In this document: one piece after another, positions 4,235 to 42,700 of the stretch
Layout: every line of letters starts with the position of its first letter
Numbering within the stretch: position 1 is the stretch's first letter
Source: Mobula birostris
Taxonomy: Eukaryota
Reading direction: 5' to 3'
Length of the DNA: 64,000 nucleotides
NCBI RefSeq assembly: GCF_030028105.1
Contig: NC_092379.1
Location: forward strand, 46,300,150-46,364,149
The notes under the pieces: generated by a model
Databases searched by the model: none
Told to the model about the DNA's origin: nothing
What the model saw: only the letters and a program-made list of their open reading frames with translations
Program-made: the position numbers and the translations under genes

Positions 4235-4489
4235 ATTACCTTACATGATAAAGAACCCACCCATACATCCAGCATCCTCTTTGACTTTCTACTGTCAGAC
4301 AGGAGACTCCAATGCATAAAAACAAGAATTACCAGTTTCTTCACTCAGGCCATTAGGCTTCTGAATTCCTTGTTGCATTGCATTTGAAGTGTTATCGGTT
4401 AATCAATTCATTACCAGAAAATATTTAATTTATGTACTTTACTTTCTTTATATATGCATAATTCATCTAGATTTTATCCTTACTTTCAT

Positions 4490-5328: not shown

Positions 5329-5439
5329 TACCCCTATCCTTCAAAGGATTTTTACCGGGGTAAAAATTATAGGCATGAATACATTATTAGATACACACAA
5401 GTATACATGTTCATCAGCTATTTGGCTAATACAGAGAAT

Positions 5440-8011: not shown

Positions 8012-8110
8012 TTCTGCTGTTTGTCTTTTCTTTCTTTTGGGAATTTTAACCCAATCAATTTACTCCGTCCCAAATTTAGCGTTCAAAATCGCGGATAAAA
8101 TCCTCACTTA

Positions 8111-21600: not shown

Positions 21601-22179
21601 TAAAGTATTTTGTTGGAATACTCGGCCACCTCAAATGGTGTCACTGAACAGGCATGGCTCTATCATAGAAACATGGTCCCTGAACTTCGTTCTCTTGTCT
21701 ATGCAATTTATTCATTCGATTACTATTAACAGAAAATAACATTTCATAATGAAATAAAGACTGAGGATGCGAGTGACGAGTCCAAGCCACATCAGTCTCT
21801 ATGTAAATACATGGCCCGAACCTCTCTTTTCAAATTTTCCTCTCACCATCAATGCATGCCCTCTAGTATTACACATTTCAATCCTGTTGAAAATATTTCG
21901 GCTTCCTGAAATTTATATGCTTCCCATAATTTTCTAACGTGCTCTCAGGTCTCGCCTTCGTAGGCCACTCAAGCATAAACAACCCTAGTTTCCCCAAGCT
22001 CTCCTTATACTACATAACCTCTAATCCAGACAGAATCCTTATAAACCACTTCTGCACATATCAAACTGCAACTTTACTTCCCGAGGCTTGAAAACATATC
22101 TCTGGCTAATAAAGGCAAACGTAAGATTTGCTTTCTTTACCACACTATCAAATTGTGCTGCCACTCTGAGAGAGCTGGG

Positions 22180-24885
22180 ACATGGACCCCCAAGATCGCT
22201 CTGTACCTGAAAGGCGCAGAGACACATGACATGATCACTTGGGGTCTCCCAATGTCTCGGAAGAGGCGCCCCACTCACTCGTTTGTCGATCTGATCAAAG
22301 AATTAAAAGAGGAAGATAATGCGACGGAGGCGCGTCAGGTCTCCGTCAGCAGAGTACAGTCCGCGGTAGTAGCCTCGGTGCTAGAGATCCCTGATAGCCC
22401 TCCCTTGGGGGTGATAAGTGAACTCGTTCCTGAGATTGAAACTGAGATATCCATGTTGTTATCTGCAGGTGCGACCACTCCGCATGACAAAGCCGACTGG
22501 GAGTCGAACCCCCTGAGGGGACGGACCAAGCAGTGGGCTGCTAGTGAATGGGGTCCCGCGGAAGGGGAGAGACCGGTATTCTCTGCGATAACTGTGGGGA
22601 AGAGAAACATTTCAGGTGGGAGTGTGAAGGCCGCGAAATCTTCGGAGAGTGAGCCCCCAGCTACTTAAGCGGAGAAAGACGAAAGGAAACTTAGAACCCA
22701 GTGAGGGAACGGCCTGGCTTCTCGGGGGGAATGCGTTCCAATCAATGTATCAACGAACACCCTGAAGCAAAAAAACCTATTCCTGAAGGCTTAGCGGGGC
22801 CAAGCTCCAGTGTATCGCTACGGATCGAGGGTATTTATGCTGGAGCCATTTTTGTCACAGGCTGTCAGGTTACTCTGCTGTATCGTTTGTTTTACAACCG
22901 GTATTTGACGCATTTACCATTGACGCAGTTCAATGCACTAGAGATCTGGAGTCTTAGTACGGATGACTACCCGTATGATGGTCACTTGTCCTTGAATCTG
23001 GAGTTTTCGGAGACAGATGTGGGAGCAGGCGAGGTCCGTAATACATTTGTGTTAGTTTGTCCGGACCCGGTCGGACAGCGCAAAGCTTCAGTTCTTTTGG
23101 GGACGAATACCCCTATTGTGAAAAGGCTAATGGGAGCCTGCAAGGAGAAAGTTGGAGAGAGTTTTCAGAGAACATTGTCTATTTACCTCATGTTCCGAGC
23201 TGCTTCTGAGGAAGTGTGTGGCCGCACTGGGCTGGATGATGAGCATAAACGGGGGACTGTGTGGTAAACCCAGTCCAAACCAGTCGTGTTACGGCCTGAG
23301 GAAGTAGCTAAAGTGACGGGAAACCCCGAATTTCCCGGAATGCCTGATGTCAAGGACCACTTGGTGGATGCTCCGGAAGACCACGAAGAGAAGTCATCCT
23401 GACCTGCTGGGGTATTGGTGAGACTCGAGCTGCAGAAGCCCTCGGTTGCACAAGTCAACAGGATGACTGTGATTCTCAGGAACACCTCGGAGAGGGAGGG
23501 CACCCTTAGCCAGCGTATGCCAATGGCACCCCTCTGTCCGGTGACGGTAAAATCTAGTGTCTCTGTGAGACAAGTCGGGAAGAAACTCTCTCCAAAAAAG
23601 GGAAATTTGACTGCCGAGTCATTCAACTTTTGGGGATTCCCTGGTATCTGGAAGCTGGAAGGGAAGTTCGATAGAGAAGATGTTGAAGATGGAAGATGTC
23701 TTTCCCACTGATGCGTTTGATGTGGGTTTTCCAAGAGCACTAGCCACACCATTCGGGAGACAGAAAACACCCAGTTCATAGACAGGTCGCGGCGACTGGC
23801 ACTTGCAGACGTTTAGACGTTCGGCAGCATCTCCGGAAGCTGAAGGAAGCTGGGATCATCACTGAGTCCAGAAGCCCTTATGCGTCGCTAATAATGGTGA
23901 CCAAGAAGAAGAATGGGAGGGTACAGATGTGTGTGGACTATTGGGCTCTTAACGGGCGTACAGTCGCCGACCAGTATACTGTGCTGAGAATGGTGAATGC
24001 GTTGGCCTGTCTGAGTGGTGCGATGGACGTCAGGAGTGGATATTACCAGACACCTACGAGTGAGGCTGACAAAGAGAAGACGGCTACTGGGATTCTTCCA
24101 GTTTGAAAGGATAGCCCAGGGCATATCAAGAGCCCCCCGCGACTTTCCAGCATGTCATGGAGAAAGCCGAGGGGGATATGAACTTGCTTAAGGTGTTGCT
24201 CTACCTGGATGATCTCACAGTATTCCGGTCCACCTTGAACGAATATGAGGCTGGACTACTGAAAGGTGCAGGGCTGCCTGAAAGATGCAGGGTAAAACTT
24301 TCCCTGGACAAGTACGGGACGTCTATCAACTATATGGGGCACATAGTCTCAGGAATGGAGTAGTTAATGATCCGTCTAAGATAGAAGCAGTGATCACAAG
24401 GCCAAGGCCCCAGTCTGTGAGCGTCCTGACCTCGTTCCTTGGATTCTGTGAGAAATATCGGAGGTTCGTGAAGGACAATTCTAAAGCGAGTGACCACTTA
24501 AATCAGCTTCCGTGCTGTTACACTCTCTGGGGGAAGAAAGGGAGGAGGACTAAAAGAGAAATTGGCAAAGATTATTTTAGCCACTCAGAACTTTTTGGAG
24601 CGAGATGGGATCCGAAATGTGAAGAGGCCTTTCAGTTGCTAAAGGAACAGCTGAGGAAAAAGGCTGTGCTGGCTTTTGCAAACCCCCGATTGCCGCATGT
24701 ACTGCATACGGATGGCAGTAGACAGGGCTTCGGGGAGTTCTGCTTGCGGGACCAGGGCACAGGATTGACACCTGTCGCTTTCGTCAGCTAGGGTCAGTCA
24801 ACCTCTGAGCGAAACTACCCCACACACAATTTGGAGTTCCTGGCTTTGAAATGGGCTGTAGTGGATAAGCTAAGTGACTATATGT
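22180..24885 (+). mobile_element. Truncated gypsy retrotransposon (PNMA-like gag, protease, RT, RNase H), multiply frameshifted
   Basis: SFVDLIKELKEE gag motif, CX2CX4HX4C knuckle near 22585-22630, decayed protease IFVTGCQVTL, RT (MCVDY, DVRSGYYQ, LYLDDL), RNase H (LHTDGS; LKWAVVDKL). Confidence 0.85.
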
Positions 24886-24886
24886 A

Positions 24887-24996
24887 TACAACATGAATTC
24901 TGCAGGTGCTGGAAATTCAAGCAACACACTCAAAGTTGCTGGTGAACGCAACAGGCCAGGCAGCATCTCTAGGAAGAGGTACAGTCGACGTTTCAG
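24887..24996 (-). repeat. Penelope terminal-repeat fragment
   Basis: Reverse complement reads GGGTCTCGGCCTGAAACGTCGACTGTACC...GATGCTGCCTGGCCTG...CCAGCACCTGCAGAATTC. Confidence 0.75.
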
Positions 24997-26600
24997 GCCG
25001 AGACCCCAGTTCCTGCCCAGGAAGAGCTTGCCCTCCACGCCTTTCGAAAAGCGCTCAAGCCAGAGCGTCTTCGGCAGCATGTTCCCCTGACATCACCATC
25101 ATCACTGGCAGAGGCAAAAGGACGAAGAAACTTCAGTCCCCCAAGGCATTCTAGTGTCACCCGGCAAACCGCGAGGTTGGGCTTATGTCACCGAGGTGTA
25201 GGAGGAAACTGACGAAGAGGAGCCCGTGACACAGTTCCAACCAGCACCGCGCAGGCCCCATGGCGTGCCGCGGAGTGGTCTCTGCTATCGGTATGGCGAG
25301 GCAAGCCATATGGCCTGGGATTGCTCCGCAGCAGCGCCACGCCATAGCCCAGCGCAGCCAGCCGGCGCCGCTCGACACCTCCAGCAGAACTCTGCGGTTG
25401 TCGCCTCTCCGGGTGGGACGTTTGGGTGAAGAACAAGGCTTTTGCGTGGCCTGCGCAGTAGAGGGCATCAGAGGTCTTGCGTTGGTGGACAAGATATCAA
25501 TCCTCACCATTACCTATCTGGCTTTCCTCGCAACACGGCCCATCCACCCTGCCTGGGTCGACAACCACGCCGGTCCAGCGGCTACGGTTACTGACAACTG
25601 TGCGGCGCTGAGAGGGAAGAGGTGGCTGCGTATCGCAGTGGGGAAAACACAGTAGAATAGGAGGTGCGTATGGCTGACATCCGGGAGTCCTGCCTCATTG
25701 GCCTGGGCCTGCTGTCACGTTGGGGGGCGCGCGTGGTTGTACTGGGGGCAATGCTCTACTTCGGCGCCGACGCCGTGGTCCTCCGGCAGGACAGCTTCAG
25801 AAAGCGGACCCGACAGGATCAGCAGAAAGCACCACGGTCTCATCGCGACCCTCCACAGCGAGCAGGTGAGCGATCCTCTGCTGGTCCGAGTTAAGGGATT
25901 CTTGAGCGTGGGACAATGGCCGGAATGGGCAGAGGTCTCCGCCCTAGATCCAGAGATTAAAGCCCTATTCTCTCAGTGGGCACGCCGGAGTAGCGGGATG
26001 GGCTGCTGTTCTGGCGGAGGCCACGGTGTTACGGTCCGTGCACGGGCTGGTGGGGCAGGCCGTTTCGGGGTCGCAAAGACGTTGGGCAAGTTGCGCGAAC
26101 GCTTCTATTAGCCAGTGTACAGGCAGGACGTGGAACTGTTCGTTCACTACAAAGATGCTTGAACGTCCCAGAACGAGCCGGAGTCAGTCTAGGGCGCCAA
26201 TACAGCAGTACCAGGTGGAGGCCCCCGGTATGGGTCTACTACCGCAGCCGGAAGAAGAGACTATCCCCCAAGTTTGTAATCCATTAGAAGGGGCCGGCAG
26301 AGCTGTTCGACTGCATCTCCGATGTGGTATACCGAGAGCGGTTGCCTGAGTGGCCGAAGCCAGTCGTGCCGAACCGGGTCCGTCTGGCACTCGCTTGGGT
26401 CGTACAGTTATTTGCATGTGTGTTTGTGGGTCACAGTAACTGTAACCAGGGAATGTAATAATCACCTCCCCGTCTGCATGTGACTGAGTGGATTTCTCCC
26501 CGGGTCATAGCGCCCGGTGCTTGTCCCAGTAAACGCGGCTGTTGAATTAAACGAGCTTAACGAGCTTGTTTTCGTTTGTCATCATGGACCAAATGCTCGC
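24997..26600 (+). mobile_element. Second gypsy remnant (gag knuckle, protease, integrase pieces, LTR-like end)
   Basis: GLCYRYGEASHMAWDC knuckle; ALVDKISILT decayed protease; integrase-like pieces at about 26030-26400; TGTAACC-starting LTR-like segment at about 26440. Confidence 0.7.
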
Positions 26601-27723
26601 CACTATATATATGATCACTATCGTTGGAGGTTCTGGGACCGACAACATTAGTGACGTACTTGCAAGCAGAACCATCAATCAACTACTACACTCTGTCTTC
26701 GGTAGGTAACACAATCATGAATCCAAACGGCCAAGTCACCATGGATAGCATGCTTCTTAATCTTCTGTACGAGTCTCCCATGAGTGGCTTTCTCGCATAT
26801 CTCCCTAAAGCCGACGTAGACATATTCTATCTCTCTACCTTTACCAATCATCTCCATCACCTTCTTGAAACCTTCAATACTGATACTAAGAGATGACCTG
26901 CCTCGCACAAAGCTATACTGATGATCCTTAATTAAGCTATGCTTTCCCAAATGCTCATAAATTCTATTTCTAAGAATCCGCTACATCAGTTTCCCTACCT
27001 CTGACAATAAGATCCACCAATCTATTATTTCCAGATTAACGCCATTTCCATTCCAAATAAAGGAACACCATCCTCCCTCCACCTCCCCCCCCCCCCCCCC
27101 GCAACAGCTTCTTCCCTCAGGGAGTGAGAATAATGAATACCCTGCCAACGCCTATATATCGTCTCTAGGGCAGCGGACTGCTTACTGCACTGTTTACTAT
27201 CTATCGGCGCTCCGCATTACTACATACATTTTGAATTATAATTTACGAACTTATTTATAGTATACTTTGCCGTTTTATACGTGTGTGATATATGATGTGT
27301 GGATGCACCGTCGTCCGGAGGAACGTTGTTTCGTTTGGTTGTCTATATGTACACTCAAATGACAATAAACGAACTTCAGACTGAACTTGTACAAATATGT
27401 TGGTCATGGCGTCAGCCATCACCGTTCTCGCCTTTCTCTAGAATACTTCAATAGGCCCTGCAAACACTTCAAGACGAATGATTTTAAAGATATTCCTAAT
27501 CTCAAAATGTCCTGCCAAATTAGCATGCTCCACTCTGGTCTCACTACCCTCTAATTCTCTCCCCTCGGTAAAAACATATGCAAAGTACACCTTAGGACTG
27601 AACGCTCATAATCGCTCTCCAAAAGCATGCTTCCGCTTCCTACTTTATCCGTGAATGGTTCTGTCCTCTGCCGAGTTATCTTTGTTTATCGAAGTGGGTA
27701 TCCTACTTGCCAAAATATGGTCC

Positions 27724-27724
27724 C

Positions 27725-27770
<46 letters not shown>

Positions 27771-27817
27771 TCTCTCTCTCTCTTACACACTCACACACTC
27801 CCTCTCACTCTCTCACT
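27724..27817. repeat. (CT)n/(CA)n microsatellite
   Basis: Direct reading. Confidence 0.95.
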
Positions 27818-28739
27818 CTCCTAATTTTCTTATTGAGACTTTTCTTGCTTATTTATATTTTTTTCAGTATCACTGTTCGGTTTTATCTCCCTAAACCTTA
27901 AGCACGCTTTCTTTATCTTCTTGACTAAATTTGCCACGTCTGCCACCACCCACTCTTCCTTATAAGTTATAGATTCCATTAAAATTATGTATTTTATGCG
28001 TATCGGCTGCCCTCAGAAGTTGATCATTTATCATATTCATTGCCCATCTTCTTCTCCCTTTGACATCATTATGGAATATGGTTCGTAGTTTGCCACGTTG
28101 TTCGAATTTGACAAATCCCTTCACAATGAACAATCTGATAGGATCTTCGCCCCTAAGTCCATCTTCTTTCTGTCTTCTGATCAGAAATGACCGGATTACT
28201 ACCCTAAATTAGACAGATCTGTGTTTTTTTCATCTCAATGCTTTCTGTCTAGTCGAGTTCCTCCAGTATCTTGTGTGTTGCTTCATTGCTATCCACGCAC
28301 ATTGCATGCTAAGTCTCGAAACCACAATTAAAAATAAATTTCCGTTCAGATTTTGTTACTACGTCTGGGATCAGATTCATGTTGACAGCCAGTGGTGAAT
28401 AGAGGAAGCAAGGTAGGGAGACAGGGATGTATTCAGTTTGTCTGCATCATTAGGAATAATCTTTAGTTATTCGTGGTGATGAACTGAATTGGTTTCAGAG
28501 CATTTTCTGTGTCATAATGACCTTCAGACTTTTAACATATTTTTGCGAAGCTCTCTCCATATAACAAACCAAAGAGAAATATGTTCAGTACGACGGAAGG
28601 AAGCAATGAAGATCTTTCTCTAAATTTCTATCCATACATTCACGTTAATGCGTCATATATTTTACCGATGTAATTATGGGATATAATGCATATCATTTTC
28701 CAAGCTATAATCGTAGTGAATGTGCAGTCATTCTGCATC

Positions 28740-28773
28740 ATGCAAATGAGGCCAACCTCTCGAGGCTTATAAA
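28740..28773 (+). promoter_or_regulatory. IgNAR: IgNAR V promoter: octamer ATGCAAAT (28740-28747) and TATA box (28768-28773)
   Basis: Exact octamer followed 20 nt later by TATAAA, about 90 nt before the leader ATG. Confidence 0.8.
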
Positions 28774-28863
28774 GTCTTTGCTCCTCCATAAGTTTGCACA
28801 GACAACCTGCGCTGATGTCTGGAACCTTCTCTGTCTAGCAGGCTTTCAGTTCGTGAAGGAACG

Positions 28864-28906
28864 ATGAATATTTTATGTGTTTCGATATTTTTAACCTGGC
28901 TGCCAA
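28864..28906 (+). CDS. IgNAR: IgNAR leader exon (MNILCVSIFLTWLP + phase-1 A)
   Basis: ATG at 28864, GTAAGT donor at 28907; resembles IgNAR signal peptides of the MNIFLLSVLLAWLPN type. Confidence 0.92.
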
Positions 28907-29034
28907 GTAAGTGCAGTTCGGTTTTAAAGAGAATAATGGTTACTATATTGCTGTTGCTTCCACAAATTTCATTTTATGTTAAATCTTGTGCTGCTTCAGA
29001 TATGCGATGACTAAATATGTTTTCCTTCCTTCAG

Positions 29035-29306
29035 ATGCCTTCAGTGTATCGGTAGAACAGACACCAAGAGAAGCAATAAAACAACCAGGCGAAACTCTGA
29101 CCATCAACTGTGTTTTAAAAGATGGTAACTGTAACCTGCGTAGCACATCGTGGTTCATCCAAAGACCGAGTCAATCGGGTTGGGATAGGCTGTCTATTGG
29201 AGGACGATATGCGGAATCAGTCAACAACACAACAAAGTCCTTTTCCCTACGGATCAGCAACCTAATTGTTGAAGACACGGCCACGTATTTCTGTAATGCT
29301 CAAGAC
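29035..29306 (+). CDS. IgNAR: VNAR segment, type II-like with CDR1 Cys
   Basis: Acceptor TTCCTTCCTTCAG. Translation (N)AFSVSVEQTPREAIKQPGETLTINCVLKDGNCNLRSTSWFIQRPSQSGWDRLSIGGRYAESVNNTTKSFSLRISNLIVEDTATYFCNAQD. Canonical Cys, Trp and Cys present; CDR2 region deleted as in VNARs. Confidence 0.96.
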
Positions 29307-29344
29307 CACAGTAACGAAGCTGAGCACACGCCAATTCAAAAAGT
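29307..29344 (+). other. V 3' RSS: CACAGTA - 22 nt - TCAAAAAGT
   Basis: Heptamer 29307-29313 immediately follows the V coding end; nonamer 29336-29344. Confidence 0.9.
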
Positions 29345-29539
29345 TTGAAAATCTTTCACGCGAGAATCTCTGACTGCTTCGTTCTTATGGAAAAGAAAAT
29401 TACTGAGCAGCAGTTGATTCCGCTATAGAGCGAACGTACATTAGTACTAAGTTGGCGACAGTCACAATGCCGCTTATGTCCAAGTGGACACAGCTGAAGG
29501 TGCAGCGTCAGTATTCTCCCAGAGTTATGTAAATGGAGA

Positions 29540-29616
29540 CTTTATTGCTATTGATTCAACCACTGTGCCAAGGAACAAGCGACAGTGCCACAGTAGTCTA
29601 AGCCATAGCACAAACC
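29540..29616 (+). other. IgNAR: D segment 29568-29588 (CCAAGGAACAAGCGACAGTGC) with 12/12 RSSs
   Basis: 5' RSS CTTTATTGC-12-CACTGTG (heptamer 29561-29567); 3' RSS CACAGTA-12-GCACAAACC (29589-29616). Confidence 0.9.
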
Positions 29617-29918
29617 TCCGAGACAGTTTTATTTTTTAAGCTCATCTATTTGTAAAAAGGATTACAAAATATGCCTTTACGTGCATGGATGTTACTCAAC
29701 ATAGCTTTTCAAACGATTTCACTTCTCCTTTATGTTGAATTCTACTTACAGTCCCTGGTACTCAAACAGCGAAATGCCAGTTTTATTATCATATGCGCTT
29801 ACAGCGCACTGAATAAATACAAGGGCGGGTGAAACTGAAGGAAATGGAATATATTGGTCAGCCCTTCGTTCCTGTATTATTGTGGAAAGCCTCCGCCTAT
29901 CTTTCGGTTTTAATGATT

Positions 29919-29957
29919 ACTTTCTGAATTGAGCTGAAAAGCAACTTAATCAATGTG
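29919..29957 (+). other. J 5' RSS: ACTTTCTGA - 23 nt - CAATGTG
   Basis: Nonamer 29919-29927 (reverse complement TCAGAAAGT); heptamer 29951-29957. Confidence 0.85.
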
Positions 29958-30003
29958 TGCAAATACCATAACGGAACTGGTACAAAGCTGACTGTGAAAC
30001 CTG
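29958..30003 (+). CDS. IgNAR: J segment (CKYHNGTGTKLTVKP + phase-1 G)
   Basis: GxGT-x-LTV motif; GTAAGT donor at 30004. Confidence 0.93.
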
Positions 30004-32519
30004 GTAAGTGATATCTTTTATTACATTTTGAGCAAGCACGTACTTTTCCCCGAGGTCAAGTATAATTATATTCTCGTTTAAATGATGCAATCTGAAAAGG
30101 GCAGTATGATTTTATTTTATTTTTTTTGGAGTATAAGCATTTCACTGAGACACCCCAGAAGAATTTAAGTATACGTCATTCTCCTCCCAAGATAATACCT
30201 TCGCTCGTTTTAAAAAACGAACGTTGGAGTATTTTTTACAAATTGAAGCGCACAAATTACCCTCGACCTGCTACGCCCCACCCACGTCCGACGGTTACTT
30301 TAAAGTATTACCTGCTGTATTGATGTAAGTGCCATGTCCTCATATCTTGGCATATTTGAGTGTGGATTTACTCTCCAATGGTTGCAGACCCATGCAGAAA
30401 AGAACTTTGAAGATGAAATAGGTTTCAGTACAGAAGGGATCGATAGCTTAATAACCTGATACTTTGAGGGGGTTGTTAGAACATATGCTTATTGCAAAAA
30501 CAACTTGCCATTTAGCTGCAATGGAAGAAAGAAATGTCTTCTATTTAGAAACACATACCATTCTCTAACAAATCCATACATTTAGAAGACCAGGTTGAAA
30601 CAAATTTTATGTTGTCAGAATCGTTGGACTTATATAACTTTAGTTATAATTTGGTGTCAATGGTGAGAGTGTTCAGGGAGGGCAGAAGTAGGCTAAAGGT
30701 CTGTGCGCAAGGCCGGAAAAGATACTGAATGAATGCCAACATAATCAATATCGTCTTTGAAAGCGGAGCACAATAATATTAAGTCTGTACCATCTCGCTG
30801 AATGCTTTAGTCAATTGCCACGGCGCTATATTTAATTAAATGCTACACTCCAGATCTTAATGAATGACATTCCATATGTAGATTATAAAGGTTTACAGTG
30901 TTAATCAGACTGTTTTGTGGTACAAAAGATAAAACTGTCATCATTGAAGCAGTCTGCTGAAATATAGGTTGCAATGGAAACATTGCTGCGAAACGGGTTT
31001 TAATTTTCATCAGTCAATTGAATGATAGCGTCTACAAGTAGATCCTTCCCAAAGCAAACTCAAATGTAAGCAAACCTCTGACACTATTATGAGACCGACA
31101 AATGTCAGGGAAGTAATTTGCAAAAATATCCATCATTCGTCCAATTTACTTGACCTTATTGCTATTTGTTTGCTTCAACTTTCTTAGTTTTAAACATGCT
31201 GTAAAGATCCTTTGTCCGAGTTTAGTCGTGTTTAAAAGTCCTCTGAATCTCGTTGTTTATGGAGTTTTGTGGGAACCCGGTACAATTCCACTTGTGTTTT
31301 TGTTTTGTTAAATAAGCAAGTAAACAACATCGCCTTTTTTCGTATATAGCGCTGTGGTGTATTACTCCGTCTACCCGGCTAATTTTCACCCAAATTAATG
31401 TAGACCTCCCCTTGCGTTTTGATGCTTTTGGGAAAGGAATTTCTCAGACGTCAAGCACAGTCCATTCCATGCACTTAACTGAGAAACTGAGAAGGAATCG
31501 ACATTTGAGAAGAGTACCAGAGGGTGAATTTATTAAATATTTAGAAACACCATCAACACCCTTTCTATTTTATTATGCTACCTGCAATCGAAGGGAAGCT
31601 GTCTGATACCAGCACCTCTTCTTCAGTCCAATAAAATGTATTGGACTACTCTTTCACTTCATGGTCGTCAGTCTTATTATAAGCTCTATATCTCCCCTCC
31701 TTCTGTAATATGCGATGACCGTTTTCTTTGTATGTCCGAAACGATCTCTGCTTTAAAAATTATGCCAATTTTCTCATTCTGCATTCGAATAATTTCAACA
31801 TTTGCAATACCCTGTGAAAGAAATTAAATATTTCCCTAATCTCTATCCTAAAGGGGAAATCCCATATTTATGTTCCATTTCACTCCCACATCCGAAAGAC
31901 ATGCTGTTGGTTAGCTAACTGGCAAATTAGTATTGTCTACAGTGCTTAGAACAATGATAGAATTTGATGCAATTGATGTGGTTGTGGGGGCGAATAAACT
32001 AAAATGGATTAACGTAGAATTATTGCAACTCACTTATGTAACCCTAGCCTAATCATAGGACGATTTACTAACCATTCTGACTTTGGACGATAGAATTAAA
32101 TGACAGTACCTGGGAAACCCACACGGTCATGGGGAGAACAAGCAAGCTCCTTAGAGACGGCGTCAGAATTGAACTTTGTACACTGACACTTCGAGCTGTG
32201 ATAGTGTTGCGCTAACGGCAACGCTTTTGTGTGTCTTGCACTTCTCCATAACTCTTTCTAAATATCCATATTCCCTTAGTCCATATCTCGGAGACTAATT
32301 TTAAATATTCGGGACCCAAGTACCCATCCCTGTGATTCTAGTGAGCAGTTAGCATTGTCCTATTACAATGTCAGCCATATTCCAAAGATGTCTGCTATGG
32401 TTTAGTGAATGTGGGCATGCGCTGGAAACGTAGCGACAATTACGGGCAGTCCAGCACCTTCCTGACTAAATGGATTTAACGCAAACTACTCATTTCACGA
32501 GTTTGCATCAGTTTCACTC

Positions 32520-33600
32520 CATAAGGCCATAAGACAATAAGAGACAGGAACAGAATTAGGCCATTTGGCCCATCGCGTCTGCACCTCCATTTCATCATGA
32601 CCGATCCAATTTTCGCCTCCTACCCAATCTCATGCCTTCTCCCCGTACCTCTTCGTGTCCTCGCCAATCTAGAATCTATCAACCTCAGCTTTAAATATAC
32701 ATAAAGACCTGGTTTCCACAACTTCATGTGGCAAAGAATTCCACAGATTCACCACTCTTTGGCTAAATAAATTCCTCCTGATATCCGTTCTAAAAGAGCG
32801 CCTGTCTATTCTGAGGTTGTTTCCTCTGGTCTTAGACTCTCCCACTATAGGAAACATGCTCCCCATGTCCACACTATCGATAGGTTTCAATGAGATCACG
32901 CCTCATTCTTCTGAATTCCAGCGAATACAGGCCCAGAGCCATTAAACACTCTTCATATGACAAGCCAATCAATCCTAGAATCATCTTCGTGAACCTCCTA
33001 TGAACCTTCTCCAGTTTCAACGCCTCCTTTCGAAGATAAGGGGCCCAAAACTGCTCACAATACCCCATCTGAGGCCTCACCAGTGTTTTATAATGCTTCA
33101 GCATTCCCTTCTTGCTTTTATATGCTAGTCATCTTGAAATGGATGCTAACATCGCATTTCCTTCCTCACCATAGATTCAACCTGTAAATTACCCTTTAGG
33201 GAATCCTGCACAGGCACTGCCAAGCCACTTTGCGGCACAGTTTTTTTTTTTTTGCATTTCCTCCCCGTTTAGAAAATAGTTAACTCTTTCATTTCTTCCA
33301 CCAAGGTGTTTGACCATGCATTTCTTGACAATGTATTTCAACTGCCATTTCTTTGCCTGCCGATTGTCCTAATCTGTCTAGGGCCCCTCTATTTCCTCAA
33401 AACTAGCCGCCCTCCACCTATCTTCGTATCATCTGCAAACGTTTCAACAATATTATCAATTACATCATTCAAATCATTGACATATAACGTAAAAAGAATC
33501 GATCAGATCCCGGTGGAACACCACTGGTCACCTGCAGCCAGACAGAAAAGGCTCGCTTTGTTTCCTGCAAAGCAGCTACTGCTTTATCCATGCTAGAATC
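32520..33600 (-). mobile_element. CR1-clade LINE 3' fragments in the J-C1 intron
   Basis: Minus ORFs 32874-33104 and 32669-32899 match the CR1 ORF2 C-terminus (YKTLVRP...WAPYLRK; RVVNLWNSLP) plus the 3' UTR. Confidence 0.85.
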
Positions 33601-33959
33601 TTCCTGTAATTCCATGGGCTCGTAGCATGTTTAGCTGCCTCATCAAAGGCCTTCTGAAAATCCAAGTACACAACATCAATCAGCAATCGAACCGGGCACT
33701 GCAAATTGTCTCTCATAGTGTAAAAATAGATCATTAATTGGTAGGGTGGACTCGGAAAATTAAAGTGGCATTATGATCAATGTTATCTGTTGCCAGCTCT
33801 ATCTCAGTAGATACACTGTCAACCGGGCATTGTTGATTCCCACATTCAGTGCACTTCAACAATCATCTACAGCAACTTGCAGTTTGAGAAAAATGGAAAC
33901 TTGCTGAAGTTGCAAAATAACTTTTGTCCCGTTCAGGTAAACCTAGTCGAAAATTGTGG

Positions 33960-34930
33960 AGTCTGTAAAATACTATATTTTGTAATATGGACAGACTGGT
34001 GACGTTTCAGATACGATTACCATTTAGCAAGCCTACCTTACTCATGCTTTTTCTGCGACTAATACATATCATAATCGTCAAATTGCAAAGTACATATACG
34101 TCATCATACACAAACCAGAAATTAATTTTCTTGCGGGCATTCACAGAAGATACCATGAAACACAATAGAATCAATGAAAACACGCACACATTAAGGCGGA
34201 CAACGAAAGGGCAAGAGGGAAACTGTGCAAATCAAACAGAAAAAAAGAAACAAATAATATAACTAAACAATAAATATCCTCACCATGAGATGATTCTTTT
34301 TTAAACTGAGCCCACAGGTTGTGAGAACAGTTCAATGTCAGGGGGAATGAAGTTGAGTGAAGGTAGTCCTTCTCGTTAAAGAACCTGATGTTGAAGGGGT
34401 AACATTTGTTTTCGAACCAATTAGTTTGGGTACCTAGGCTACTGTACCTCCCTCCTGATGGCGGCAGCCAGAAGAGAGCGTGGCCTGGACCCTGAGGGTC
34501 CTTGAAAATAAATGCTCCATTCCTGCGACAGCGCTGCGTATAGATGCGCTTAATAGCGGGGAAGGTTGTATTCGTCATGAACTGTGCTGTATCCACGACC
34601 ACTTTTTTGTAGGCTGTCCGTTCAAGGCCATTGATATTTCCATACCAGACCGTAATGCAATCAGTCAGTATACTCTCCACCGAACATCTACTTAAGTGTG
34701 TCAAAGTTTTCGATGACATGCCGGATCTTTTCAAAATTGTAAGAGAGTAGTGCTTTCTTTCTAAGGGCACTTACCAGTTGGACTCTGGATAGATCCTCTG
34801 AAATGATAACGCATAGGAATTTGAAGTTGCTAACTCTCTCCACCTCTGACCCCTAGATGAGGACCTGCAGATGGACCCGCGGTTTTCTCCTCCCGTAGTC
34901 AATAATCAACTCCTTGGTCTTGCTGAATTT
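33960..34930 (-). mobile_element. Rex1/Babar-type LINE 3' fragment
   Basis: ORF 34171-34770: VESILTDCITVWYG...LPPSGGRYSSL. Confidence 0.75.
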
Positions 34931-35284
34931 GAGTGAGAGATGTTATTCTGACAGCTAGATTTTCAATCTCTCTCCTCTAATTAAGTCGTACGGCCAACGA
35001 CAGCTTTGATACGACGAAGAGTAATCAGGCGAAATTTCAAAGTACCATTCAAGGTATAAAAAACAAATCACTGTAAGCTGTGATACCATTATGCTGAAGG
35101 AAATATCTCAGCTTCAGTTATCCCTTCAGCCGAAAGGTCTTAGAAGAGCTAACGTAGCTCTTGACATGTAGAGATTCCTATGATGCAAGGAATATTGTAG
35201 TTGTCTTATGCCTTACAAGTTGTCAGAAGAACAACGTAAAATTGATCCAATCAATTCAAAGACTTCTGTTTTTGTTAATTTTAG

Positions 35285-35605
35285 CAAAACAACCGACTCC
35301 GCCAAACATCAATCTTGTCTATTCTGCAACTGCCGAACAAAAAGCACAGGGTTTTGTGCAATTGATTTGTCTCATGAGCGAATACCTACCTGAAAACATC
35401 GCAGTGACCTGGCAGAAAAACGGACAAGCCGTACAGTCCGGCTTTACCACCACTTCTTCCACTGAAAGTTCAAGCGAAACGTTTACTTCAGCAAGTGTGC
35501 TCAAAGTGCCTGTGAACGAATGGGCCAGTGGTGCTGTGTACTCGTGCCAAGTATCCCACTCTGCAACCAGCAGCAACATCCGCAAAGAAATACGAGCTCA
35601 GTCAG
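35285..35605 (+). CDS. IgNAR: IgNAR C1 exon (intact)
   Basis: AKQPTPPNINLVYSATAEQKAQGFVQLICLMSEYLPENIAVTWQK...YSCQVSHSATSSNIRKEIRAQS closely matches shark IgNAR C1. AG/GT sites, phase 1. Confidence 0.96.
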
Positions 35606-36645
35606 GTAAGAAGCAGTTCCCAATCCATAGGTGCAGTATTTCCACTTTCGTCCTCAGTATTTCATTTGGTGGGCTGTAATCATCTACAGACAAGATTTTA
35701 AAATAACCAGGCTACTAAAGATTAAGATGAGTGCCAGTGTCAAGTTCGGGTAAGGGACAGATAGGAGTGTGATTCGGAATGTTTAGGCAGCAAACATTAA
35801 ATATCAGAGGTAAGAATTACGAGGAAATATTGCGAAGTGTAGTCAGAAGACGTCATGGCGCTTCAGTGAATATTGATTTCTGATCATGTTAATGCATCGA
35901 ATAGAATTTGTATATCTGAAATGATTCTAAGGAATCCGGACATCTTAAAAGATAAGCACAGGAAAGCAGCGGTAAAACAAAAATCTTCCGTGATCTTCTT
36001 TAACTTTCAAATTTAACAGCTCATTAATTTTTACTGTTGTGTTATATTTGTAGCTGGTATCAGCATGCAATAGTGAAAGTTTTGGAAAATAAATAAATGA
36101 AAGGAAGAAAGTAGTCGAGGCAGCCACTCGACTTATCAGACAGTTAAACCTTGTGCTAAACTGGTCCTTCATTCTTGCATAAATAGATCGAACAATGCAT
36201 ATGTATTTAGCACTTCTTTCCATCGAACATTCACTTCCATCTTCTAGCTACCTGTGTTCTGTCCTCTCTCAGCCAATCTCTCTGTCTCGCTGCATCCCAT
36301 TGACCGTTCTGCAACAAGCCACTACCCCTTCCCCACGCCAGTGTTTTATCACTGTCGTACTTTCCGGGGATGTCCGGCTGTATCTCTCCCTCCATCCTTC
36401 GCCACACTTGTCTATGAATGACGATACGTTATTCATTTTCAACCATTTTCTTTTCTTTTCAGTATAGAAGAGTAGCGTGTGGTCATGATCTAACTCAAGG
36501 GTTCACGAAAAGACGACTTAAGCATGATTTAAAATTAACAATTTCCACCTTAAGCTTTTAACTTGTAGCAGGTTATTAATAAATGGAAATCCCTGCTAAA
36601 CTTCAGATTCGTCACGAGTCCTTTCAATGACTGTACGTCTTCTAG

Positions 36646-36948
36646 AATTCGCATTGTTTCTCGGTGATCCCACCGTTGAATAAATGTGGATGAACAAAAC
36701 TGCCACACTGGTGTGCGAAGTGATCGCTACAACTCCAGCTGAGGTTTCCATCTCTTGGACAGTGGTTGGGAAGGAAAGAGCTGATGGCGTTCAAACAGAA
36801 CAAGCAGCAAAGATCGGGAGTCAGTACGTGACAGTCGGCCGTTTGACCAGCAGCGTGGCCGAGTGGGACAGCGGGGTAGAATACTCCTGCTCGGTGCAGG
36901 ACAGTCAATCAGCTGCTCCCCTATCAAAAAGGACACGAAACGCCAAAG
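36646..36948 (+). pseudogene. IgNAR: IgNAR C2 exon with in-frame TAA at 36681-36683
   Basis: EFALFLGDPTVE*MWMNKTATLVCEV...EWDSGVEYSCSVQDSQSAAPLSKRTRNAK; homologues read DPTVEEIW. Splice sites intact. Confidence 0.92.
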
Positions 36949-38666
36949 GTGGGTGCAATAACAACAATCGAAATGCAAAGCAGTGTAGATGCAGAAAGAG
37001 GAACAGAAACTGCTGGATGCCAGGCAGCAGTACTCAGAGGAAAATAGGCATGGTGGTGAACGAGTTGCCCTCTGCTAGAGTCAGGATGCATTATCTTATT
37101 CAAGGGAAGACAGGTTTTCTGACAAGTGGTACACCGATAGCGTTCCACCCAAGATTTCGTCGCATGATTTGTTGAAGTCATAGGACCCGACAGCATTGGA
37201 ACAGACCCTTTGGTCGACAGAAACCAAGCCCGCTTCAGCCCTCATTCAGCGAATTCCACTTTGATCTAGTTTATTGTTTCCTAGATTCAACAACTCTTAG
37301 AAGATTCTACTCTACATTAAGAGTAAATTATGGTAGTCGACGTGGCTAGTACTGGCATGCTGTTCGATATGGAAATTGAGAACCTGAAACAGAACGCGCA
37401 CGGCCACACGACAACCGTATAAACTCCAGTAGAGCAGATCAAGACCGAAATCAATGTTTCTGGATACTTGCAGCAGGCATTCGAATAGTTGTATCCTTGC
37501 ACTACCCCTCCAAAAAGTTGTAGTCATAAAATACTGCACAAAAATACAGTTGGCCCTCTGACCCCAATGTTCAAAACTATTTCACATCTACCTGAATCCA
37601 ATTTTCAGCAACAGAAAAAAAAATATTTCAGTGTCTTTCCTATTTCAGTGATCGACTAAATGTTTGCCAAATGCAGTGACTTAAGGTACTCTCTAAAGCT
37701 CCTTCCACTTAACTTAAGTACGTACTGTCTTTGGATTTCATAATCTACACATACGGATGCTTTTGTTTACTTAGCCTACCAGTGTCACTGATAATTCTGC
37801 GTGGTGTTATCGGGTCACTACTCAGATTCATTCACTTCAGAAAAAAAACAAGCTCAGCGATTCTAATTACTCCCCATAACTGACGTTCTCCAATCCAGCT
37901 AACATACAGTTGAATCTCTTATGCGCTCGTTCCAGCACAATGCCATTCACCTAACAACGAGGCGACTAGAGTGCAAACTCGAGGGCACCAGTGTTTAATA
38001 AAGTTGAAATAGACCATCCTAAATTTCATCTGCTAATCCTGACCTGTGAAAGCAAGTATGCCGTGTTCGTTTGTCAACACACCAACTACCGGCTCTGCCA
38101 CTTGTGGGGAACTATGGATTTAAACGCCAGTATCTCTCTGTTGATAAATGTTCCTTAATAATGATCTATTTTGTATTAATGGCATACCCCCTTCTTCAGT
38201 TCCCAAATTGCATCGACTACATTTGTACACTTGCTGCCGCAAAATCTAACATTGTATTTGATCAGTATTGCCGCAGCTTTTGACGCCCATCATCGCGATT
38301 CAAAACACCACCAAGTTTAGTCTTATGCATTACTCAGAAATGATATTTTCTATATGCACATACAAAACGTTATATCACAAACAAGAAAGCTCTTAGGACC
38401 GTGGTACGCCCCTCGTGATACACTTCCAAACAGAAAGTTATCATCACCATTACCCTTAGCGGCTCACTAACAATTAGACCGCTCAGCACGGATTCTTAAA
38501 CAGCTTGACCAGCGCATAGTTAGGAAAATTGTCAAATGCAAATGTGGGCACTGTTTCCTTCATCGCAGATACTACAATTCTTGCTGTGGATTTGCACCGT
38601 TTCGTTTCAACCACATTTCGGAAAGACAGTTTTTGGAGATTAACACGGGTTGACCTTCTCTTGCAG

Positions 38667-38984
38667 CCAAAGCACTGGAACCAACGGTACATCTCTTTCC
38701 CCCCTCTGCAGAGGAGATTCAAACTGCGGGTATCGCTACGCTCACATGCATGATAACGGGATTCTACCCCGATGACATAACCGTTTTGTGGCAGAAGGAC
38801 GGAGCCGCATTCTACTCTAACGCTACCAGCTTCCCCACTGCACTTCAACAGGATATGACCTTCAACACCAGAAGCCTCCTTTACTTGACTTTGGCCGATT
38901 GGAAGAAGGACGCAACATACTCCTGCGTCGTCACGCACCCACTTTCACAATCTACTGTGAAAGCAAACTTCAGCACCCGGAAAA
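38667..38984 (+). CDS. IgNAR: IgNAR C3 exon (intact)
   Basis: AKALEPTVHLFPPSAEEIQTAGIATLTCMITGFYPDDITVLWQKD...FPTALQQDMTFNTRSLL...YSCVVTHPLSQSTVKANFSTRK. Acceptor TTCTCTTGCAG, donor GTAAGC. Confidence 0.95.
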
Positions 38985-39479
38985 GTAAGCACAATTTGCC
39001 AAAAGGCTCACATCCATTCCGTTCTTTACATCCTAGTCAAGAGGTAAAAATACAACAGGAGGTCGGCAATGAGCAGATTGAAACGATCATTACTGTAGTA
39101 CTGTATTAGTAATCAGACGTCTCCGACGATCCGATACAATAACATATGTGAGCGTCAACTAAAATTAGAGTTATATAATCGGATTTCTGTTGAACATGCG
39201 GAGACAAACTGAACTATAGTGTTAAAATACCTCACCAATAGGATCTCAATAGGGTAAAGCTGGAAGAACGTGTATAAATATTAATTGATGAATGACACTA
39301 TAAACGGAGCTATTCTTGGCGTTTCTAATTACGTTCTAAGATCATACACCAATCGACCACACTTGTAAACAGACTTATTTAAGGTCAGGTGCAATATGAT
39401 CAATAGATAAGAATTAACATACTAATAACTCACAAATGATAGAGTGCTGATTTAGTGATGAGTCTCCGACACGACCGGC

Positions 39480-39730
39480 GTGAATAATTGGGTGAGAAAC
39501 GTTCTCAGTAAGAAGTTGTACATTCTCCCGTGGAGTACATGGGATTCCTCCTGGTACTCCGGTTTCCTTCCACAGTCTAAAGACGTACCGGGTGGTAGGT
39601 TTGTTGATCATTCTGAATTGTCCGGCGATTAGGCCAGGGTTATATCGGGGGTTGCTGGCGGTGCGGCCCGAATGGCCAGAAGGGCCTATTCTGCGTATAT
39701 CTCAAAATAAATAAGTAAATAAATAAATAA
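39480..39730 (+). mobile_element. tRNA-derived SINE (V-SINE-like)
   Basis: Core GGTACTCCGGTTTCCTTCCACAGTCTAAAGACGTACCGG...GGTAGGT; A-rich tail. Related inverted copies at about 40090-40380 and 43340-43510. Confidence 0.65.
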
Positions 39731-39731
39731 C

Positions 39732-39797
39732 TAGACAGACAGACAGACAGACAGACAGATAGATAGATAGATAGATAGGTAGATCGATAGATAGATA
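39732..39797. repeat. (CAGA)n(TAGA)n microsatellite
   Basis: Direct reading. Confidence 0.95.
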
Positions 39798-42700
39798 CAT
39801 CTTCGATGGAACAGGAAAATAGATATGCCTCTCGGTGTGAAGAGTGAATCCACATTTATGGCCAGTTTATTTTTATCTCGCATGGTGTTGATGATGCTCG
39901 GTCCTGATCTCACAACAACGCACAATGCAATACACGAATATCTACAAGGACTGTTCATTCCACGCTGTAGGGAGTTCAGACCATTGCCGTTTTTACGGAA
40001 AACTTGAATGTAGTCTACAGGAAGTTGTGTCAATCATTTGTCAATTAGATCCCATTATACAGTGAAATATGATTCATTTATTTAGCGATACAACGCGGAG
40101 TAGGCCATTCCGGCTGTTCGAGGCACGCCGCCCCAGCAGCTGCACAACCCCAATTAACCCTATCCTAATCACAAGACAATTTACAATGACTAATTAACCT
40201 ACCCGGTCGGTCTCTTGACTGTGTTAGGAAAGCGGAGCATGCGGGAAAACCAATGCATTCCACCGGGAGGACATACAGACTTCTTGAAGACTGGCACCGG
40301 CATTGAACTCCGAACTCCAGAACGCTCCGACCTGTAATAACGTCGCTCTACCTCTGCGCTACCTTGGCGTTGTGTTGTCGGTTGGCAATGGTTGGAGCCA
40401 TAAATTGCAGCAAAGAAAATGATGAAAATCATTGTGCAGGCACAATGACATCATCGTATTAGCTTCTCAGGGCAGGTTTTAAATACCCTTCAGCAACTTC
40501 ATGAATGTTAACTCCTGCCCATGATAAGGACAGATGGTTGTTTATGAATGTATATTGCTCAAATCTAATCACAAATCCTCATCAAATGAAGCTGTCAATG
40601 TATTATTGCGGGAAGATCTATGTGGCAAGTGAAAGTGAAATTTCTACGACACTAGTTCCAGACAATATTTAAAAGAAACTGTAACAACCTGCTCTTGATA
40701 TTCTATGCATTACGTAAAAGAACATGCAGACCACTATGAACCCGAACACTTTTCAGTCTCCGACTATTCATAGAATACGCTATCGTTCTATTTATTTCTC
40801 CTGAGTTGATATCCTCACGTTTTCCACCTTACCTTCAATCAGCTAAGTATTAGCAATTTATTTTCTTGTCCACATCCCTCCAAATTTTCCCGGAATCCTT
40901 CTCACAGATCATGATGCTGCCTAGCTTGTATTCCCAGAAAATAGACATTACAGTATTTCCAACAGTAATATCATTGAAATAGGTTAAGAGCAGCTGAGGC
41001 CCCAGCACCGGTCGCTGCTTTTACAACCATAAACCCTTATTTCATTCGCTTCTGGTACATGGTTGCTGTACGGTTTAACATGCACACAATCGACTGTTTT
41101 TTATTCACCTGAGCCACTCTGACAGTATTTCCCAAAAACAAGATGTTGCGATAGCCAGGGGCTTCAAATACACGGGTATTTTTTCTTCTTCAATGCACAC
41201 CACATCCTGACTTGGAAATGCCCTATAGTCCCTTCCCTTCAGGTTCGATGTGTTACATCCTGTAACTCAACTCACTACTCAACAGCAGTGTACATTCTGC
41301 TTCAACAGAAGCATTAAAACAGTTCAAGAAAGTAGCTCACTTTCTCGAGGCTAAGCATGAACGACAGATAAATCATGACAGTCAAAGCGCATAGGATCCA
41401 AAGCAAACTGGAAAATTGGATCAAACATTGGTTTGAACACAGTAGGTAAAACTTAGTGAAGGGTGATGCTTTTCAGATTAGACGTGTGTATACAGTGGTG
41501 CATCGCAATGTTCGCTGCTGGGATCATTGCTGACTGTGATATTTATTAATGTCTTGAATTTCAATGTAGAAGGTCTTATTAGTAAGTTTGCTGATGACAC
41601 GAGAATCGCTGGTGTCATAAATGGTGAAAAACTTTATCAATGGATCCAGCAGGATAAGTGGGAGAGCTGATCAGAACATTGTCAGAAGCAAGTTAGTCCT
41701 GTTACAAATGAAGTGATGCCTCTTGAAAAGTCAAATACTCCAAGATTAGAGCATGCACTGTACGTGATAGGAGACTACGAATTTTTGATGAACAGAGAGA
41801 CCCTGGTGTATAAGTCAATTGTTCCCTGTAGGTGCCATCACAAGAGGATAGTGCACTATGGAATGCATGTAGAAGCTTTCTTCACTGGACCAATAATATA
41901 TTAAAATAACTCGAACTTCATGTTCAGACTTTATGAACTAGTGGCTGGATCGCAATTGGAATATTTGTGCAGTTCTCATCACCATTCTATAACATTCACG
42001 TGATGGTGCTGAACAGAATGTAGAGGGCATTCCTCTTGACTGAATCGAAAAACTTCAGCTATCAGAGAAAAATGACAGGTTTGACTTGTTCTTCTGGATC
42101 TAAGGAGGACGAGGACACGCTTGAGAGAAGCATAATCACATGAATTATGATTAATATAGTTGGGGTGGATAGTTACAATTTTTGTAATGTTCCGTTGAAT
42201 GGAACTTGATGCACAAGCTAACGTGGAAATGAAAACACTTCCTGAGAAAGTGGAAGCACATTAACCAACAAAATATAAGAGTCATCTAGAAAATTACTTG
42301 ACTAGAAAAGGTGTCGAATGCTGTTCACGAATGCGAGTAATGTTGGATGAGCATAGGTAGGTCTCTCGGAGCGAAGTCGGCTGAAGGGCCCGTTTCTGTG
42401 CTCTGAACTCAATCTTTGTTTTCATACCTTTCCTTCCTTCATTTTCTGTTCTTATTGTCTGATCATAAAGACCACATTATTTCACACCGTCAGAAAAACT
42501 ACACTTATTGCACTCGTTGCTCTCCACCATCTGCTCTCGCGCCTGAAAAGTCAAGTTCTCCAGCTTCGTGTAGTTCACACTTTCATTTTCCACCAGAAAT
42601 GACCATTTCTATCAGTAATCCATCTGCGATTTCCTTCAAATTTTCTCTCTCCATTAGTACAGCCTAGCCTGCTGGGCACAATCCACGGCCCCGCTGTTGG

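What the first reader, a model, noticed from the sequence alone, without database searches (positions are those of the whole stretch)
36646..36948. Single nonsense change in C2 of an otherwise clean locus
Seen: TAA at 36681-36683 where homologues have Glu (GAA). It is a substitution, not a homopolymer indel. Promoter, leader, V, RSSs, J, C1, C3 and all splice sites show no disabling lesion. C1, C2 and C3 are all phase 1-1, so skipping C2 gives an in-frame V-C1-C3 chain. Inference: a very recent pseudogene, a null allele, or a locus that produces a shortened IgNAR by skipping C2.
Basis: partly seen in the sequence, partly recalled or inferred. Interest (0 to 1): 0.72.

Follow-up and report, generated by a model that had tools for sequence, protein, structure and literature searches.

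The report
Stop codon in truncated IgNAR pseudogene
The stop codon is real, but it sits in a copy of a shark/ray single-chain antibody (IgNAR) gene that had already lost its whole back end, so this is ordinary decay of a dead gene copy and not a new short antibody.

Summary
Exon C2 (36646-36948, 303 nt, phase 1-1) has an in-frame TAA at 36681-36683. All five paralogous C2 exons on the same chromosome have GAA there, and nurse-shark IgNAR C2 (PDB 4q9b) has Glu. DNA contigs from two runs match the window exactly across the T.

The locus is not "otherwise clean". The window has V, one fused D, J, C1, C2 and C3. It has no C4, no C5 with secretory tail and no transmembrane exon.

The genome holds six IgNAR clusters within 1.1 Mb. 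Only the two outer ones carry C4-C5-Sec-TM. The four inner ones, this one included, stop about 2.4 kb past C3. Two of the other three align straight through that junction. The third aligns up to a further deletion of its own that removes the junction. So the truncation most likely happened once, before the copies were amplified.

Changes private to this copy look neutral: 9 non-synonymous against 5 synonymous, and an exon rate 0.74 of the intron rate. The complete cluster A has a ratio of 0.31.

RNA contigs cover C1-C3 at high depth. At the W-diagnostic sites the table lists they carry the other clusters' letters. No exon-exon joint was seen.

Verdict: a secondary lesion in an old, 3'-truncated duplicate pseudogene. 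The scan reached the same reading for a sister cluster 420 kb upstream (s1-145200).

The parts
28864..28906 (+). Leader exon (ATG at 28864, donor GT at 28907), preceded by octamer ATGCAAAT at 28741-48 and TATAAA at about 28769
   Evidence: Read directly; conserved in all six clusters
29035..29306 (+). VNAR exon, open reading frame, Cys in CDR1, followed by heptamer CACAGTA at 29307-13
29568..29588 (+). Single D segment flanked by CACTGTG (29561-67) and CACAGTA (29589-95). The five other clusters carry about 375-675 extra bases here, so this D is probably a germline fusion
29958..30003 (+). J segment (…GTGTKLTVKP), heptamer CAATGTG at 29951-57, donor GT at 30004
35285..35605 (+). C1 exon, phase 1-1, open; best solved match is IgNAR C1 (4q97, E 2.4e-40)
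36646..36948 (+). C2 exon, phase 1-1; best solved match is IgNAR C2 (4q9b, E 5.6e-28 for the part after the stop)
36681..36683 (+). In-frame TAA (GAA>TAA, Glu>stop), private to this copy
   Evidence: exact DNA contigs
38667..38984 (+). C3 exon, phase 1-1, open, donor GTAAGC intact but with no downstream exon to splice to; best IgNAR match is 4q9c (E 6.8e-36)
41378..41397 (+). Truncation junction. Homology to complete cluster A stops at A 15600 and resumes weakly (68-70%) at A 27920. The missing 12.3 kb of A holds C4, C5+Sec and TM1
   Evidence: sister copies P2 and P3 align straight through it

Best explanation
The window holds one of four 3'-truncated duplicate copies of an IgNAR heavy-chain gene cluster: V, fused D, J, C1, C2 and C3 only. 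An ancestor copy lost, or was never copied with, the segment carrying C4, C5 with the secretory tail, and the transmembrane exons. That truncated unit was then amplified at roughly 200-kb spacing, between two complete clusters (A at 45.68 Mb and B at 46.78 Mb of the same chromosome). Without a secretory tail or membrane anchor, and without the C3-C4 linker cysteine that the cited nurse-shark work predicts to link the two chains, the copy cannot make a normal IgNAR chain. Its exons now drift neutrally. The G>T change giving TAA at 36681 is one of 14 private coding changes, a secondary decay lesion. Shown here: the stop, the missing exons, the junction shared with P2 and P3, the near-neutral private changes, and RNA contigs that carry the other clusters' letters. 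Inferred: the order of events, and the absence of any function.
For: The stop is private to this copy; the other five have GAA. There are no C4, C5-Sec or TM1 exons anywhere in the window. The genome has two copies of C4-C5 and of TM1 against six of C2, C3 and V. P2 and P3 align colinearly through 41378-41397 at 92-94%. Sister copies also decay: P2's C2 has two stops and a GT>AT donor, and P5's C2 lost its first conserved Cys. Private changes in this copy are 9 N to 5 S, against a neutral N share of 0.72-0.74 (p = 0.28). Pooled over the truncated copies they are 48 N to 22 S (p = 0.17). The private exon/intron rate ratio is 0.74 here (p = 0.35) and 0.77 pooled (p = 0.08), against 0.31 in cluster A (p = 9e-7). 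With 14 neutral changes, 0.63 stops are expected. RNA runs X9 and X11 cover only the three exons. At the W-diagnostic sites listed (35359, 35487, 38892/3, 38926) they show the non-window letter in 99.7-100% of depth. Their mismatch counts fit clusters A and B, although the 6-mismatch C2 contig would fit P3 equally. RNA runs hold 0.30 of the C2 words, close to the 0.37 expected from sharing with cluster A alone.
Against: Pairwise dN/dS for C1-C3 among the truncated copies is 0.27-0.52, below 1. This fits inherited constraint or exon homogenisation rather than present function, but it does not exclude past or weak selection. Sister copy P3 is still fully open through C3. Only assembled contigs were available, and they drop rare variants, so low expression cannot be excluded. 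In X11, 9 of 3215 depth units at 35359 do not carry the other clusters' G and may carry the window's private C. A low-depth intron contig of the family is present in X9. The junction itself (41378-41397) lay outside the stretch laid with reads.
Confidence: 0.85

Rival explanations
1. The V(D)J part of the truncated clusters is still used. After rearrangement it is joined to the constant region of a complete cluster by the cluster-to-cluster 'switching' described in nurse sharks. The stop in C2 would then be irrelevant, and the copies would persist as V-gene reservoirs.
For: The V exon, RSSs, J and leader are intact here and in the sister copies. Inter-cluster V-to-C switching over more than 120 kb is reported for shark IgM/IgW (review PMC4279169, citing Zhu et al. 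2012 and Zhang et al. 2013). The complete clusters lie 440 and 660 kb away on the same strand.
Against: Nothing I read reports such switching for IgNAR. Private V changes are too few to show constraint. The earlier notes found no expression of the sister V genes.
Confidence: 0.07
2. The T at 36681 is one allele of a polymorphism (a heterozygous or population-level null allele), with an intact GAA allele elsewhere in the species.
For: Only one individual's DNA was examined and contigs cannot show zygosity. The change is private to this copy and could be young.
Against: Even with GAA the copy lacks C4, C5, Sec and TM, so 'null allele of a working gene' does not apply. The contig across the T has the same depth as the flanking unique contigs, and no G-bearing contig was listed.
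Confidence: 0.05
3. The locus makes a shortened IgNAR by skipping C2 (V-C1-C3).
For: C1, C2 and C3 are all phase 1-1 with intact splice sites, so skipping is in frame. Natural IgNAR short isoforms exist (PMC8692893, PMC11641339).
Against: The known short forms lack C2-C3 (secreted) or C4-C5 (membrane), not C2 alone, and they end in a Sec tail or TM exon that this copy lacks. No C1-C3 joint and no window-specific RNA was found. Private changes look neutral.
Confidence: 0.02
4. The TAA is an assembly or consensus error.
For: A single-base difference in a multi-copy family.
Against: Two runs give contigs identical to the window over 162-174 bases spanning the site, together with four other private letters nearby.
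Confidence: 0.01

Closest known systems
[quoted passage not shown]
   Same: A tandem family of IgNAR clusters within about 1 Mb, of which only some are complete. Pre-joined D segments occur in some clusters. Expression comes from the complete ones.
   Different: There the incomplete clusters lack V genes. Here they keep V-D-J-C1-C2-C3 and lack C4, C5, Sec and TM. P2, P3 and this copy share one junction, which points to amplification after truncation.
Nurse shark GcIgNAR3, a third locus that is not expressed (PMC11641339)
   Same: An IgNAR locus linked to expressed ones but silent in RNA-seq.
   Different: The reason for its silence is not given there, and that locus has assembly gaps. Here the lesions are defined.
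Natural IgNAR short isoforms: membrane form V-C1-C2-C3-TM, and secreted form lacking C2-C3 (PMC8692893; PMC11641339, which cites Rumfelt et al.)
   Same: The same exon phases allow in-frame domain skipping. V-C1-C2-C3 is the domain content of the short membrane form.
   Different: Per PMC8692893 and PMC11641339, the membrane form is spliced from a complete cluster, and the bamboo shark's C2-C3-less secreted form comes from its own locus (IgNAR3). Both end in a TM or Sec tail. This copy has neither, and a form lacking only C2 is not described.
Nurse shark IgNAR constant domains C1, C2, C3 (PDB 4q97, 4q9b, 4q9c)
   Same: They are the best solved IgNAR matches to the three exons. The codon hit by the stop is Glu in 4q9b.
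   Different: A different species. The window's C2 cannot be translated through.

Membership tests
IgNAR heavy-chain gene cluster (complete, functional) | VNAR-type V exon with RSS, D segment(s) and J in one cluster | tested here: met
   Open V exon with CDR1 Cys, heptamers, one D and a J. Only one D, where the paralogs carry about 375-675 extra bases.
IgNAR heavy-chain gene cluster (complete, functional) | C1, C2 and C3 exons of IgNAR type | tested here: met
   Best solved IgNAR matches are 4q97, 4q9b and 4q9c. C2 carries the stop.
IgNAR heavy-chain gene cluster (complete, functional) | C4 and C5 exons | tested here: not met
   No hit in the window to cluster A's C4 or C5 peptides other than cross-hits to C1-C3. 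Only two genomic copies exist, at clusters A and B.
IgNAR heavy-chain gene cluster (complete, functional) | Secretory tail and transmembrane exons | tested here: not met
   The Sec tail lies in A's C5 exon and TM1 at A 21638-21961. Both are absent from the window. TM1 has two genomic copies only.
IgNAR heavy-chain gene cluster (complete, functional) | Uninterrupted reading frame through all exons | tested here: not met
   TAA at 36681-83.
IgNAR heavy-chain gene cluster (complete, functional) | Rearranged, spliced transcripts in lymphoid RNA | tested here: inconclusive
   RNA contigs carry the other clusters' letters at the diagnostic sites listed. The C2 word share is 0.30 against 0.37 expected from cluster A alone.
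Duplicated (non-processed) pseudogene | Arose by genomic duplication and keeps its introns | tested here: met
   Colinear with clusters A, P2, P3 and P5, introns included.
Duplicated (non-processed) pseudogene | Disabling lesion(s) | tested here: met
   3' truncation plus a nonsense codon.
Duplicated (non-processed) pseudogene | Relaxed constraint relative to the functional paralog | tested here: met
   Private N:S is 9:5, not different from neutral. The private exon/intron rate ratio is 0.74 against 0.31 in cluster A. Small numbers; pairwise dN/dS is still below 1.
IgNAR short isoform locus (domain-skipping form) | Transcript joining non-adjacent C exons and ending in a Sec tail or TM | tested here: not met
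   No Sec or TM exon is present. No exon-exon joint was seen, though the contigs are short.

The most novel reading that the evidence does not exclude
The four V-to-C3 truncated IgNAR units are not mere debris. They would be kept as extra V(D)J cassettes whose rearranged V regions are expressed on the constant regions of the two complete flanking clusters, by inter-cluster switching or trans-splicing. On this reading the C2 stop costs nothing, and the family widens the VNAR germline repertoire.
Probability: 0.06. Interest if true: 0.7.

Novelty: new member of a known kind. Interest (0 to 1): 0.18.

Why it matters
It matters mainly for annotation. Anyone mining this genome for VNAR germline genes, or designing VNAR library primers, should know three things. 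Only two of the six IgNAR clusters are complete. RNA contigs match those two best. The four inner copies, this one included, are truncated, and three of them also carry coding or splice lesions in C2. The family is a clean example of a truncated immunoglobulin cluster being amplified after it lost its 3' end. It gives a neutral-rate yardstick beside two selected paralogs. It does not point to a new antibody format.

Tried and rejected
- Exact-product look-up of the 163-aa open frame that starts just after the stop found nothing on record.
- The first literature search was too broad and two read calls failed on a short term.
- A words search of earlier findings was blank.
- The search for C1-C2, C2-C3 or C1-C3 joints in RNA gave no joint at all, because the Logan contigs are 60-156 bases long. 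The only joints listed lie in a high-copy repeat at 40.1-40.3 kb.
- Pairwise dN/dS (0.27-0.52) first looked like constraint on the truncated copies. I set it aside after counting copy-private changes and comparing exon with intron rates.
- A simple '12.3-kb deletion' is not certain. The right flank matches cluster A at only 68-70%, against 85% on the left. The junction may therefore be the edge of a partial duplication ending in a repeat, not a deletion.
- Assembly error was rejected on the exact contigs.
- I did not run the large protein searches, structure prediction or complex prediction. They would not change the verdict.

Full report
**Names used.** W is the window's IgNAR cluster. A (45.68 Mb) and B (46.78 Mb) are the two complete clusters on the same chromosome. 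P2 (45.88 Mb), P3 (46.11 Mb) and P5 (46.52 Mb) are the three other truncated copies. X1 and X2 are DNA runs of one sample. X9 and X11 are RNA runs of the same organism.

**The observation.**
- The exon at 36646-36948 follows an AG, is followed by GT, is 303 nt long and has phase 1 at both ends.
- In its frame the twelfth complete codon (the thirteenth of the spliced exon) is TAA, at 36681-36683.
- The rest translates to an immunoglobulin C domain. Its best solved match is nurse-shark IgNAR C2 (4q9b, E 5.6e-28).
- C1 (35285-35605) best matches IgNAR C1 (4q97, E 2.4e-40). Among IgNAR structures, C3 (38667-38984) best matches IgNAR C3 (4q9c, E 6.8e-36).
- The genome, 4.0 Gb, has six copies of this exon on one chromosome, at 45.68, 45.88, 46.11, 46.34 (this window), 46.52 and 46.78 Mb.
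- All five other copies read GAA at the codon, with no indel. Paralog A's 'LRDPTVEEIWI' is identical to 4q9b. The change is a private G>T substitution.

**Is the T real?**
- Contigs built from two DNA runs of one sample match the window with no difference: X1 over 36585-36758 and X2 over 36585-36746.
- That stretch also holds four more letters private to this copy.
- The contig depth (6.7 in X1) equals that of other window-unique pieces (6.4-6.7), and no T>G row was listed.
- An assembly error is therefore very unlikely.
- The sample may be the one that was assembled, and contigs cannot settle zygosity.

**The locus is not otherwise clean.**
The following are all intact:
  - the octamer, TATA and leader;
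  - the open V exon, the heptamers and J;
  - every AG/GT.
- A six-frame search of the window with the C domains found only V, C1, C2 and C3.
- Aligned with cluster A, the window is colinear from upstream of V to 41378, which corresponds to A 15600. It then resumes only weakly (68-70%) at A 27920.
- The missing 12.3 kb of A holds three things:
  - C4, whose linker carries a cysteine that nurse-shark models predict to bond the two chains (PMC11641339, AlphaFold3);
  - C5 with the secretory tail (…GKPTLVNVSLVLTDSFKLC);
  - TM1.
- None of these is anywhere in the 64 kb.
- Genome-wide there are two copies of C4-C5 and two of TM1, at clusters A and B. There are six copies of V, C2 and C3.
- P2 and P3 align straight through the window's junction at 92-94%. 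P5 aligns up to a further deletion of its own that removes the junction.
- The truncation therefore most likely arose once and the truncated unit was then amplified. Because the right flank is so weakly similar to A, it may be the edge of a partial duplication rather than a deletion.

**Decay or function?**
- P2's C2 has two stops and a GT>AT donor. P5's C2 lost its first conserved cysteine. P3 is still open.
- Pairwise dN/dS for C1-C3 among the truncated copies is 0.27-0.52, which at first suggests constraint.
- Changes private to one copy tell otherwise.
  - This copy has 9 non-synonymous (one of them the stop) and 5 synonymous changes, against a neutral expectation of 72-74% non-synonymous (p = 0.28).
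  - The four truncated copies pooled give 48:22 (p = 0.17).
- Exon and intron rates point the same way:

| Copy | Private changes, exons | Private changes, introns | Odds ratio | p |
|---|---|---|---|---|
| This window (W) | 1.6% | 2.1% | 0.74 | 0.35 |
| Truncated copies pooled | about 1.6% | about 2.0% | 0.77 | 0.08 |
| Complete cluster A | 1.7% | 5.2% | 0.31 | 9e-7 |

- With 14 neutral coding changes, 0.63 stops are expected. One stop is what drift predicts.
- Exon similarity to B (synonymous divergence 0.12, against introns only about 75% alike) suggests past homogenisation of the C exons. That would also explain the low pairwise ratios.
- The truncated copies differ by 5.6-7.0% in introns, and this copy's private share is about 2%. 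The gene's death long precedes the stop, and the stop itself need not be very recent.

**Expression.**
- Four RNA runs of the same organism hold 0.30 of the sampled words of this C2 exon. Sharing with cluster A alone predicts 0.37.
- Laid on 35200-41150, runs X9 and X11 cover only the three exons, so they are real spliced RNA, at depths of about 500-9,700.
- At the listed sites where this copy is unique, they show the other letter:

| Site | X9 (other letter / all depth) | X11 (other letter / all depth) |
|---|---|---|
| 35359 | 4630 / 4630 | 3206 / 3215 |
| 35487 | all | all |
| 38892-3 | all | all |
| 38926 | all | all |

- Mismatch counts of the main contigs equal those expected for clusters A and B. 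The 6-mismatch C2 contig would fit P3 equally.
- No RNA piece was shown over 36646-36695, and no exon-exon joint was reported. The contigs are only 60-156 bases long and drop rare variants, so absence is not proven.
- Traces exist but cannot be interpreted:
  - 9 of 3215 depth units in X11 that do not carry the other clusters' G at 35359, and may carry this copy's C;
  - a depth-12.8 contig with the mismatch count expected of P3;
  - a depth-6.8 intron contig of the family in X9.

**Comparison with what is known.**
- The white-spotted bamboo shark has seven IgNAR clusters in 800 kb. Four are complete and three incomplete, and several have pre-joined D segments (PMC8692893).
- The nurse shark has three loci, of which two are expressed (PMC11641339).
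- The known short isoforms are V-C1-C2-C3-TM and a secreted form lacking C2-C3. Both end in a TM or Sec tail.
- A form lacking only C2 is not described, and this copy could not finish any chain.
- Cluster-to-cluster switching of V regions is reported for shark IgM and IgW (PMC4279169). This leaves a small chance that the truncated copies serve as V cassettes. I could not test this.

**Earlier notes of this scan.**
- They reached the same reading for sister cluster P2 (s1-145200).
- They describe P3 as open only as far as C3 (s1-145201).
- They describe this window's D as a germline fusion (s1-145202).
- I re-derived each of these points from sequence.

**Verdict.** This is an ordinary secondary nonsense mutation in an old, 3'-truncated duplicate IgNAR pseudogene.

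Noticed in passing
G000:C12:45.67-46.79 Mb (loci L002-L021): Six IgNAR clusters about 185-255 kb apart, all on the + strand. The two outer ones (A, B) are complete, with C4, C5-Sec and TM1. The four inner ones are truncated after C3. They are 92-94% alike to one another, about 87% to A and about 75% to B outside exons.
   Followed up: yes
L014 / P2 cluster, C12:45879135-45879437: Sister C2 exon with two stops (TAA, TAG) and a donor changed from GT to AT.
   Followed up: partly
L018 / P5 cluster, C12:46522271-46522573 and downstream: Sister C2 exon lost its first conserved cysteine (TATLVSELI). This copy also lacks the equivalent of window 40907-42292.
   Followed up: partly
window 29587 versus the five paralogs: All other clusters carry about 375-675 extra bases between D and J relative to this window. 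The window's single 21-nt D therefore looks like a germline fusion of several D segments.
   Followed up: partly
C exons of all six clusters: Long stretches of C1, C2 and C3 are identical even between this copy and B, whose introns are only about 75% alike. Synonymous divergence is 0.12. This suggests exon homogenisation by gene conversion, or strong nucleotide-level constraint.
   Followed up: partly
G000:C12:18.4-22.8 Mb; C3:14-16 Mb and 96-97 Mb: More than a hundred C-domain exons 35-50% identical to IgNAR C2/C3 (likely IgW, IgM or light-chain cluster arrays). The nearest array is on the same chromosome as IgNAR, which fits the reported linkage of the elasmobranch IgH isotypes (PMC12227049).
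   Followed up: no
window 40100-40300: A very high-copy repeat, with contig depth up to about 25,000-38,000 in DNA runs and about 6,000 in RNA runs. It is the source of all joints and most loose ends in the read table.
   Followed up: no
window 1800-4000, 22000-26300, 53800-57000, 62000-64000: Long open frames with reverse-transcriptase-like or retroelement-like translations flank the cluster on both sides. I observed them only in the ORF list and did not analyse them.
   Followed up: no
window 35359, 36706-36765, 36033-36228 in RNA runs X9/X11: Trace-depth RNA-run contigs of three kinds. (1) 9 of 3215 depth units that do not carry the other clusters' letter at 35359. (2) A depth-12.8 piece with the mismatch count expected of P3. 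(3) A depth-6.8 intron piece of the truncated family. They could be leaky transcription, DNA carry-over or errors.
   Followed up: partly
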